This document shows positions 7,339 to 8,027 of a DNA stretch of 64,000 nucleotides, one piece after another. Source of the DNA: Laetmonice hystrix. Its lineage: Eukaryota. Position 1 is the first letter of the stretch; every line of letters starts with the position of its first letter. The notes beneath the pieces were generated by a model, which was not told the origin of the DNA, ran no database searches, and saw only the letters and a list, made by a program, of their open reading frames with translations. The position numbers and the translations under genes are program-made. The stretch covers positions 11,656,001 through 11,720,000 of the forward strand of contig OZ249437.1 in the NCBI GenBank assembly GCA_965235115.1. Reading direction: 5' to 3'.

Positions 7339-7492
7339 GTATCGTATGCACGACCAAGCAGTGAAAGCATAAAGGGTGCAAACCTGTACATAAGTGGACT
7401 GCCAAAATCCCTGACACAACTGCAACTGGAAAATATGTTTGCCTCATGTGGCACAATAATAAACTCCAGAATACTTTGTGACCACAGTACTG
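7339..7492 (+). CDS. elav: ELAV mutually exclusive exon 3a (linker + RRM2 N-half)
   Basis: gtttgtag|GTA TCG TAT...; [52 protein letters not shown]; 154 nt, phase 0 to 1; donor G|gtaggc at 7493. Confidence 0.92.
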
Positions 7493-7873
7493 GTAGGCAT
7501 TGCTACTACAATTTTTATCGGTCTATACCTCAACCAAAACCTTCCGTACCATGCAGCCTTTACCCAGCCCTAACATCGCGGAAAAGATATCGTTGGGTGA
7601 ATATGACGTCCCACGTTTTGTTTTAAGGGACGCCCAACCGAATTTGAAGGTGTTTTGTTTTGTTGACGTCCAGACTAACTGAGCGGTTGGTGTGGGGTGG
7701 CTGACTGGCGAAGGTCGTGGTTGGGGGCGAGGACTGCAGGTGACGGATGATGAAAACGAAAGCGTTTCGCCCGATCCGAACAGCGCCAGTTTTCAGTCTT
7801 ACAACCATACATACGACATACATGAATGATGCTGGCTTTCTCTGACTGACCCCCAATCCTGTCCTTTCCTTAG

Positions 7874-8027
7874 GTCTCTTACGCCCGACCAAGTAGTGAA
7901 AGTATAAAGGGAGCAAATTTGTATATATGTGGGTTGGCCAAGAATATGACCCAGCAGGAATTGGAGCAGCTTTTTGCACCCTGTGGCAGGATAATCACCT
8001 CTAGAATTCTCTATGATAACACAACAG
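7874..8027 (+). CDS. elav: ELAV mutually exclusive exon 3b (linker + RRM2 N-half)
   Basis: CTGAC branch motifs 7842-7850 + cctgtcctttccttag|GTC TCT TAC...; [52 protein letters not shown]; 154 nt, phase 0 to 1; donor CAG|gttggt at 8028. Confidence 0.93.

What the first reader, a model, noticed from the sequence alone, without database searches (positions are those of the whole stretch)
7339..8027. Tandem duplicated, mutually exclusive RRM2 exons in ELAV/Hu
Seen: two 154-nt exons with identical phases (0 to 1) encode paralogous 51-aa segments, 37/51 identical. The first 18 residues are identical although 10 of those 18 codons differ, all synonymously, which indicates purifying selection on both copies. 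Including both or neither shifts the frame, so exactly one is used. The 14 differences lie in RNP2 (LYISGL vs LYICGL), helix 1, beta2 and the following loop. Established: vertebrate Hu and Drosophila elav-family genes encode this segment once, as far as I know. Inference: one locus makes two RRM2 variants, possibly with different RNA affinity or tissue use, substituting for paralog expansion.
Basis: partly seen in the sequence, partly recalled or inferred. Interest (0 to 1): 0.8.

Follow-up and report, generated by a model that had tools for sequence, protein, structure and literature searches.

The report
Alternative RRM2 exon pair in ELAV
This worm's neuronal RNA-binding gene ELAV/Hu has two old tandem copies of one exon, and mRNAs of close relatives use one or the other but never both, so one gene makes two versions of its second RNA-binding domain; the same pair occurs in molluscs, other annelids and a bryozoan.

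Summary
Exons 7339-7492 and 7874-8027 are both 154 nt, share phase and AG|..|GT sites, and are 37/51 aa identical. The first 18 codons show 10 synonymous and 0 replacement differences. Using both or neither breaks the frame.

RNA contigs from a close relative (about 97% identical) form a clean two-way bubble. One arm is upstream exon, copy A, downstream exon. The other is upstream exon, copy B, downstream exon. Their k-mer depths are similar. No A-to-B junction appeared in any of four runs.

The pair is old, not a local novelty. Synonymous sites are saturated. Intact tandem 154-nt pairs also occur in a bivalve, a land snail, a bryozoan and a rotifer, and a decayed second copy survives in the annelid Paralvinella. 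Octopus and Pomacea RefSeq isoforms, and Malacoceros transcripts, differ in exactly this segment.

All residues homologous to HuR's RNA contacts are the same in A and B. The 14 differences lie in helix 1, strand 2 and the next loop.

I found no paper describing this pair, although database isoform models contain it. This is a new member of a known kind (tandem-duplication mutually exclusive exons), of moderate interest. Any functional difference between the isoforms is untested.

The parts
577..817 (+). ELAV exon for the N-terminus and first half of RRM1. The acceptor is at 576/577 and there is an in-frame ATG at 610. The conserved 'MQ' start exon lies upstream of the window.
   Evidence: alignment to P0247 and Platynereis Elav
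4056..4159 (+). Exon for the second half of RRM1 ([11 protein letters not shown]...NKTIK). Its donor at 4159 joins either copy A or copy B.
   Evidence: The loose ends carry its last 23 nt in front of both A and B.
7339..7492 (+). Exon copy A (type 1, '..[28 protein letters not shown]'), 154 nt: inter-RRM linker plus first half of RRM2
   Evidence: (joint 7491/2>12995/6 in X2, X10, X7)
7493..7873 (+). 381-nt intron between the two copies, with a CTGAC branch-point-like motif about 30 nt before B. It is too long for steric exclusion.
   Evidence: sequence; no notable complementary arms
7874..8027 (+). Exon copy B (type 2, '..[28 protein letters not shown]'), 154 nt. It is the copy nearer to vertebrate and arthropod ELAV.
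   Evidence: (joint 8024/7>12993/6 in X2)
12996..13227 (+). Exon for the second half of RRM2 (RNP1 GVGFIRF) and the start of the hinge. It is the common acceptor for A and B.
14673..14720 (+). 48-nt hinge cassette microexon (SRSMRGCGYTSTSAHE), in frame and optional
   Evidence: It is present in P0247/P0270 and in the X10 contig's continuation (loose end at 13173).
17997..18318 (+). Last coding exon (RFSP..., RRM3, stop TAG 18316-18318). An alternative acceptor at 17988 adds 'SLC'.

Best explanation
The window carries the multi-exon ELAV/Hu gene of a lophotrochozoan, most likely an annelid. The exon between the conserved junctions J3 and J5 encodes the inter-RRM linker, strand 1 (RNP2), helix 1, strand 2 and the start of loop 3 of RRM2. 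It is present as two tandem 154-nt copies that are spliced in a mutually exclusive way. This yields two otherwise identical proteins that differ at 14 of 51 residues.

Shown:
- Both copies are intact with standard splice sites.
- Both are joined to the same upstream and downstream exons in RNA of a close relative, at similar k-mer depth.
- No A-B junction was seen.
- Including both copies or neither destroys the frame.
- The duplication is old and the same pair exists in other phyla.

Inferred:
- Exclusivity is enforced at least by frame: 154 is not a multiple of 3, so wrong products carry early stops and should be removed by nonsense-mediated decay. Regulated splice-site choice may add to this.
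- The two forms keep the same core RNA contacts. They differ on the helix-1 face and the strand-2/loop-3 edge, including N versus T at the position that separates HuR from HuB/C/D. They may therefore differ in fine RNA affinity, partner or inter-domain contacts, or modification, and are probably used in different cells or stages.
For: - Anatomy and frame.
- RNA: run X2 holds two 208-nt contigs with the same 23-nt tail of exon 4056-4159. One continues through A into 12996 (depth 350). The other continues through B into 12996 (depth 395). X10 (a 2021-nt contig) and X7 give e2-A-e5. No 7492>7874 joint appeared in any run.
- A-type full-length ORFs from RNA assemblies: P0247 and P0270, 87% identical to the window protein, 48/51 in exon A.
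- Selection and age: pS 0.84, pN 0.14, and 10 synonymous versus 0 replacement changes in the first 18 codons.
- Other taxa with intact tandem 154-nt pairs and AG/GT sites: bivalve (L009/L010), Candidula, Watersipora, Rotaria. Paralvinella keeps a decayed second copy.
- Isoform pairs that differ only in this segment: Octopus X3/X5, Pomacea X2/X3, Malacoceros ELAV1 versus P0272.
- Tree: first-copy 'TQLDLE' exons of molluscs, annelids and the bryozoan form one clade (94/87).
- RNA contacts: HuR residues within 4.5 A of RNA (PMC13635762) map to exon positions 5-8, 11-13, 15, 17, 40, 41, 44 and 46, all identical in A and B.
Against: - The RNA evidence comes from assembled contigs of relatives with coded organisms (about 97% and about 90% identical), not from reads of the sequenced animal. 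Contig depth is a poor measure of usage.
- X10 and X7 show only the A form, so B usage is documented in one run here (X2), plus database isoforms of other species.
- The window's copy A falls outside the cross-phylum type-1 clade. The AU test cannot tell orthology (p 0.31) from a private duplication (p 0.22).
- No functional difference between the isoforms has been measured, and the core RNA-contact residues do not differ.
Confidence: 0.85

Rival explanations
1. In this species only one copy is really used. The other is a silent or decaying relic, as in Paralvinella, and the relatives' data do not transfer.
For:: Paralvinella has lost the second copy (stops, no AG acceptor). Dimorphilus, Lamellibrachia and Tubulanus have a single copy, so losses do happen. 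There are no reads from the window's own species.
Against: Both window copies have open frames, consensus splice sites and only synonymous change in the linker/RNP2 part. A relative with 97% identical exons uses both at similar depth.
Confidence: 0.05
2. The tandem pairs arose several times independently (recurrent duplication of the same exon), so the window's pair is not orthologous to the mollusc and bryozoan pairs.
For:: the AU test does not reject A and B as sisters (p 0.22). Rotaria has the Cys-type copy first, the reverse order. Only 51 columns are available.
Against: Synonymous sites between A and B are saturated. Annelids, molluscs and the bryozoan share the same order (TQL-type first, TQQ-type second), the same length and the same phases. 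There is a cross-phylum clade of first copies (94/87). Window A shares Leu28, IINSRIL and RILCD with other annelid type-1 exons.
Confidence: 0.15
3. The two isoforms are biochemically equivalent. The pair is kept only because expression was partitioned between the copies, or through drift, with no difference in RNA or partner binding.
For: All positions homologous to HuR RNA contacts are identical in A and B (mapping). Between the window and its relative, copy A changed 3 residues and copy B changed 1, so the variable part tolerates change.
Against: Type-specific residues (Leu28; Gln/Pro49 in type 1; Lys/Arg39 and YDN/S in type 2) are kept across phyla. Position 42 (N in A, T in B) is the HuR N134 position near RNA and differs in the same way between HuR and HuB/C/D.
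Confidence: 0.25

Closest known systems
Mutually exclusive exons derived from tandem exon duplication (as catalogued for many animal genes, e.g. myosin heavy chain, ion channels; PMC3912159, PMC8373072)
   Same: Two adjacent homologous exons have equal length and phase. Each has its own splice sites. One is used per transcript, the frame is lost if both or neither are used, and both copies are under strong purifying selection.
   Different: The host gene and the swapped part. Here the linker and first half of RRM2 of ELAV/Hu are swapped, which I found in no paper. The mechanism of choice is unknown. No docking/selector RNA pairing was seen, and the 381-nt intron rules out steric exclusion.
Alternative splicing of ELAV/Hu genes: hinge microexons of HuB-D, fne and rbp9 mini-exons, bee elavl2 exons 3a/4a-4d (PMC8553928, PMC2529313)
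   Same: Same family, with the same conserved exon junctions (J3 in phase 0, J5 splitting the Gly codon before RNP1). This gene also has a 48-nt hinge microexon. The shared idea is that splicing, not gene number, diversifies a single ELAV gene.
   Different: The known events add or drop short peptides in the RRM2 loop or the hinge. This one replaces a whole 51-residue structural unit with a paralogous one. It was not reported in the 11 chordate, arthropod and nematode genomes surveyed by Samson 2008.
Vertebrate ELAVL paralogs (HuR versus HuB/C/D); solved RRM1-2 structures 4ED5, 1FXL, 1FNX
   Same: Strong sequence match of the relative's RRM2 (E 1e-54 to 1e-57). The A/B difference at position 42 (N/T) equals the HuR versus HuB-D difference.
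   Different: Vertebrates obtain these variants from separate genes. Here they come from one gene by exon choice.

Membership tests
ELAV/Hu RNA-binding protein family | Three RRMs, with two in tandem, then a hinge, then RRM3 | tested here: met
   Searches give a spliced ORF of 339 aa from ATG 610. One search finds RRM_1 three times in relative P0247, and each copy matches the first half of RRM_1.
ELAV/Hu RNA-binding protein family | Close sequence similarity to named ELAV/Hu proteins and solved Hu structures | tested here: met
   79-82% identity to annelid Elav1 proteins. Platynereis Elav is the nearest named protein. HuC, HuD and HuR RRM1-2 at E 1e-54 to 1e-57.
ELAV/Hu RNA-binding protein family | Conserved exon junctions around this exon (J3 between codons, J5 splitting the Gly codon before RNP1) | tested here: met
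   Searches give the phases. The definition of J3 and J5 is from PMC2529313.
Tandem-duplication mutually exclusive exons | Adjacent homologous exons of the same length and phase with their own splice sites | tested here: met
Tandem-duplication mutually exclusive exons | Mature transcripts carry one copy or the other, not both | tested here: met
   contigs of relatives show e2-A-e5 and e2-B-e5 and no A-B joint. One search shows isoform pairs in Octopus, Pomacea and Malacoceros. This was not tested on reads of the window's own species.
Tandem-duplication mutually exclusive exons | Including both copies or neither is non-productive | tested here: met
   stops arise immediately in B when both are included, and skipping both gives a frameshift.
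Tandem-duplication mutually exclusive exons | Regulated (tissue- or stage-specific) choice | not testable with these tools
   Only assembled contigs of coded runs were available. X2 shows both forms at similar depth, while X7 and X10 show A only.
Competing-RNA-structure (docking/selector) exon clusters of the Dscam type | Conserved intronic complementary elements that pair one copy's selector with a docking site | tested here: inconclusive
   only 13-15-nt chance-level inverted repeats in 6800-8600. Conservation could not be tested.

The most novel reading that the evidence does not exclude
The A/B (type 1 / type 2) exon switch is a lophotrochozoan-wide device, probably more than 500 million years old, that splits ELAV function within one gene much as vertebrates split it between HuR and the neuronal Hu genes. 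On this reading the two RRM2 forms have distinct cell-type use and distinct RNA or partner preferences. ELAV probes and antibodies used as pan-neuronal markers in annelids and molluscs would then have been reading a mixture of two functionally different proteins.
Probability: 0.25. Interest if true: 0.7.

Novelty: new member of a known kind. Interest (0 to 1): 0.5.

Why it matters
ELAV/Hu proteins are the best-studied neuronal RNA-binding proteins and the standard neuronal marker in annelid and mollusc development. Animals with one or two ELAV genes were thought to diversify them only through small hinge or loop microexons. An old, conserved swap of half of RRM2 gives these animals two RNA-binding modules from one gene. 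It also offers a natural experiment on what the non-contact face of an RRM (helix 1, strand-2 edge) contributes. It explains why database ELAV sequences from one species differ in this block. It also flags annotation errors, such as a Mya arenaria model that carries both copies in series. Practically, probes, morpholinos and knockouts aimed at this exon in Platynereis, Capitella, Crassostrea or Octopus would hit only one isoform.

Tried and rejected
- Representative-library search with exon A alone. Ranking was dominated by multi-RRM proteins and arthropod fne/Rbp9 paralogs. It gave no close relative, but it led to the bivalve contigs.
- A- versus B-like fragments in insects. These are separate genes (fne versus Rbp9), not alternative exons.
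- The look-up of encoding contigs on RefSeq isoforms (Lineus X4, Liolophura X3) returned nothing, because only the longest product of a gene is indexed.
- Search for a third copy in the window or genome: none.
- Inverted-repeat search for docking/selector pairing: only chance-level arms.
- Steric exclusion and U2/U12 incompatibility are rejected from the sequence. The intron is 381 nt and all four sites are GT-AG.
- Tree-based proof that window copy A is orthologous to the cross-phylum type 1 was inconclusive. There are only 51 columns, and AU p is 0.31 versus 0.22.
- Meaningful dN/dS between the window and its relative: too few changes.
- The 13-residue RRM1-loop insert of P0270 could not be located in the window by tblastn.
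- Six literature searches and four papers read found no description of this exon pair. The library holds only open-access papers.
- The search of earlier findings near this place returned nothing.

Full report
**Observation**

- Exon A runs 7339-7492 and exon B runs 7874-8027.
- Both are 154 nt. Each is preceded by a pyrimidine tract and AG and followed by GT. Each starts in phase 0 and ends after the first base of a Gly codon.
- The peptides are 37/51 identical, and the first 18 residues are the same.
- Nucleotide identity is only 70%. Ten of the first 18 codons differ, all silently. Over the whole exon the synonymous difference is 0.84 (saturated) and the replacement difference is 0.14.
- A six-frame search of the whole 627-Mb assembly with B finds just B and A. 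The only other strong hit is an intronless 367-residue ELAV paralog on another contig. There is no third copy.
- Each copy alone matches the first half of Pfam RRM_1.

**The gene**

The window's first 18.3 kb hold a multi-exon ELAV/Hu gene on the + strand. Its parts are:
- 577-817: N-terminus and RRM1 first half.
- 4056-4159: RRM1 second half.
- A or B.
- 12996-13227: RRM2 second half and start of the hinge.
- 14673-14720: an optional 48-nt hinge microexon.
- 17997-18318: RRM3 and the stop codon, with an alternative acceptor at 17988.

The conserved 'MQ' start exon seen in relatives lies upstream of the window. With A or B the ORF is open (339 aa from the ATG at 610). With both, stop codons arise at once inside B. 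With neither, the frame shifts. The exon boundaries are the J3 and J5 junctions that Samson found conserved from nematodes to humans, where the exon is single (PMC2529313).

**Expression**

No reads of the sequenced species were offered, but RNA runs of near relatives hold exon-A-specific words. I laid four runs on 7300-13250.
- Run X2 (exons about 97% identical) contains two 208-nt contigs. Both begin with the same 23 nt, which are the 3' end of exon 4056-4159.
- One contig continues through A and jumps 7491/2>12995/6 (depth 350). The other continues through B and jumps 8024/7>12993/6 (depth 395).
- This is the bubble expected in a de Bruijn graph for two mutually exclusive exons used at comparable levels.
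- X10 (a 2021-nt contig of a more distant relative) and metatranscriptome X7 show upstream exon-A-downstream exon.
- X1 shows upstream exon-A, plus an unspliced piece over B.
- No run shows an A>B joint.
- Full-length A-type proteins from RNA assemblies (P0247, P0270) are 87% identical to the window protein. They carry the same three residue changes in A that X2 shows.

The spliced joints show that the runs labelled 'RNA?' are indeed cDNA. The limits are that these are contigs of relatives, that depth is not a usage measure, and that B usage in this lineage rests on one run.

**Distribution**

A region-restricted protein search returned named lophotrochozoan ELAV proteins that fall into two types in exactly this block.
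- Type 1 reads '...LYISGLPKS[LM]TQLDLE...' and often ends YDQ.T or CDPQT.
- Type 2 reads '...LY[IV]CGLPK.MTQ[QH][DE]LE...G[KR]IITSRILYD[NS].T'. It is closer to arthropod and vertebrate sequences.
- The window's A is type 1 and B is type 2.

Octopus bimaculoides X3 versus X5, Pomacea canaliculata X2 versus X3, and Malacoceros fuliginosus ELAV1 versus a metatranscriptome protein of the same 90% cluster are identical outside this block, apart from other alternative regions. A GenBank model of Mya arenaria carries both blocks in series, which looks like a modelling error.

Genomic DNA confirms tandem 154-nt copies with AG/GT sites in several taxa:
- A bivalve, with a 146-nt intron between the copies.
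- The land snail Candidula.
- The bryozoan Watersipora.
- The rotifer Rotaria, where the Cys-type copy comes first.

The annelid Paralvinella keeps an intact type-1 exon followed by a decayed second copy, with two stops and no AG. Dimorphilus (type 2 only), Lamellibrachia, the nemertean Tubulanus and a cestode gene have one copy.

In a tree of the 51 columns, the first copies of molluscs, annelids and the bryozoan form one clade (94/87). The window's A and its relative sit outside it on a longer branch. Neither 'all type 1 together' (AU p 0.31) nor 'A sister to B' (p 0.22) is rejected.

Several facts point the same way: saturated synonymous sites, the shared order, and the shared Leu28, IINSRIL and RILCD characters with other annelid type-1 exons. 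I therefore judge a single old duplication, before annelids, molluscs and bryozoans split, the likeliest history, followed by several losses. Whether the rotifer pair is the same event is open.

**How it probably works**

Shown: the frame rule makes any product other than 'exactly one' non-productive.

Inferred: nonsense-mediated decay removes mistakes, and splice-site choice is probably regulated.

The 381-nt intron between the copies and the GT-AG sites exclude steric hindrance and spliceosome incompatibility. A scan for complementary intron arms found only chance-level matches, and conservation could not be tested.

For the protein, the relative's RRM2 matches HuC, HuD and HuR RRM1-2 structures at E 1e-54 to 1e-57. 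I mapped the exon onto HuR numbering (exon position p = HuR residue p+92).
- The residues listed as within 4.5 A of RNA in the HuR-RNA crystal are R97-S100, I103-D105, N107, Y109, I132, I133, R136 and L138 (PMC13635762).
- These correspond to exon positions 5-8, 11-13, 15, 17, 40, 41, 44 and 46, all identical in A and B. This explains the invariant first 18 residues.
- The 14 differences sit at RNP2 position 4 (S/C), the loop and helix 1 (positions 22-36), the start and middle of strand 2 (39, 42), and the following loop (47, 49, 50).
- Only position 42 (HuR N134, an RNA hydrogen-bond partner in that paper's simulations) is near RNA. It is N in A, as in HuR, and T in B, as in HuB/C/D.

RRM1 and RRM2 are needed for RNA binding in HuC (PMC3643579). 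The likeliest functional difference is therefore modulatory: fine affinity or kinetics, inter-domain or partner contacts on the helix-1 face, or modification near the conserved Thr26. From my own memory, unchecked here, Thr26 aligns with a reported HuR phosphosite. None of this was tested.

**Comparison and novelty**

The phenomenon belongs to the well-known class of mutually exclusive exons that arise from tandem duplication. ELAV/Hu genes are known for hinge microexons and, in bees, for small alternative exons in the RRM2 loop (PMC8553928). I found no report of a paralogous swap of the J3-J5 exon, but the library covers only open-access papers. RefSeq isoform models of molluscs already contain both forms without comment.

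Other agents of this scan call this genome an annelid and report many such exon pairs in it. That fits my finding that the nearest named ELAV is Platynereis Elav. I rate this as a new member of a known kind. It is solid as an observation and of moderate interest, mainly for its age, its breadth, and its host gene being the standard neuronal marker in these animals.

Noticed in passing
window 14673-14720: A 48-nt in-frame hinge microexon (SRSMRGCGYTSTSAHE) with AG/GT sites. It is included in the relatives' transcripts (P0247, P0270, X10 contig). It sits where the conserved alternative hinge microexon of bee elavl2 and HuB-D lies.
   Followed up: partly
window 17988 vs 17997: The last coding exon has two acceptors 9 nt apart. 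The upstream one adds 'SLC' before RFSP and is used together with the hinge microexon in P0247.
   Followed up: partly
window 540-620: The exon with the ATG at 610 really begins at an acceptor at 576/577. Relatives and Platynereis Elav start 'MQIT...', so a short first coding exon (ATGCAG) must lie upstream of the window. No ATGCAG|GT occurs before 577.
   Followed up: partly
G000:C8:21449947-21453078 (L003 793-1896, minus strand): An intronless 367-residue ELAV paralog with three RRMs and a Gly-rich hinge. It is about 48-50% identical to the window gene in this exon and may be a retrogene or the 'elav2' type of annelids.
   Followed up: partly
P0270 residues 83-95; also Octopus X3 and Pomacea X2: Relatives and molluscs have optional inserts in the RRM1 loop at the junction between the first two RRM1 exons, the position of the fne mini-exon. 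The corresponding exon was not located in the window's 818-4055 intron.
   Followed up: no
L011 6477-6629 (Paralvinella palmiformis): A decayed second copy of the exon (two in-frame stops, acceptor AG lost) sits 480 nt after the intact type-1 exon. It is a relic showing loss of the pair in this annelid.
   Followed up: yes
P0166 (Mya arenaria 'ELAV4-like', residues 124-174 and 184-234): A GenBank gene model includes both alternative exons in series. This is probably an annotation error caused by the tandem pair.
   Followed up: partly
L012 1-1048 and L013 1-1518: In both Dimorphilus and Tubulanus a Peptidase_M14 gene lies head-to-head just upstream of the ELAV gene, suggesting conserved microsynteny. 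This was not checked in the window's genome, where the upstream region is outside the window.
   Followed up: no
window 53192-53977 and 54707-55084: A G-rich 41-nt minisatellite of about 20 copies (86% matches) and a looser 23/46-nt array. Together they account for the strong GC skew of 52-56 kb.
   Followed up: no
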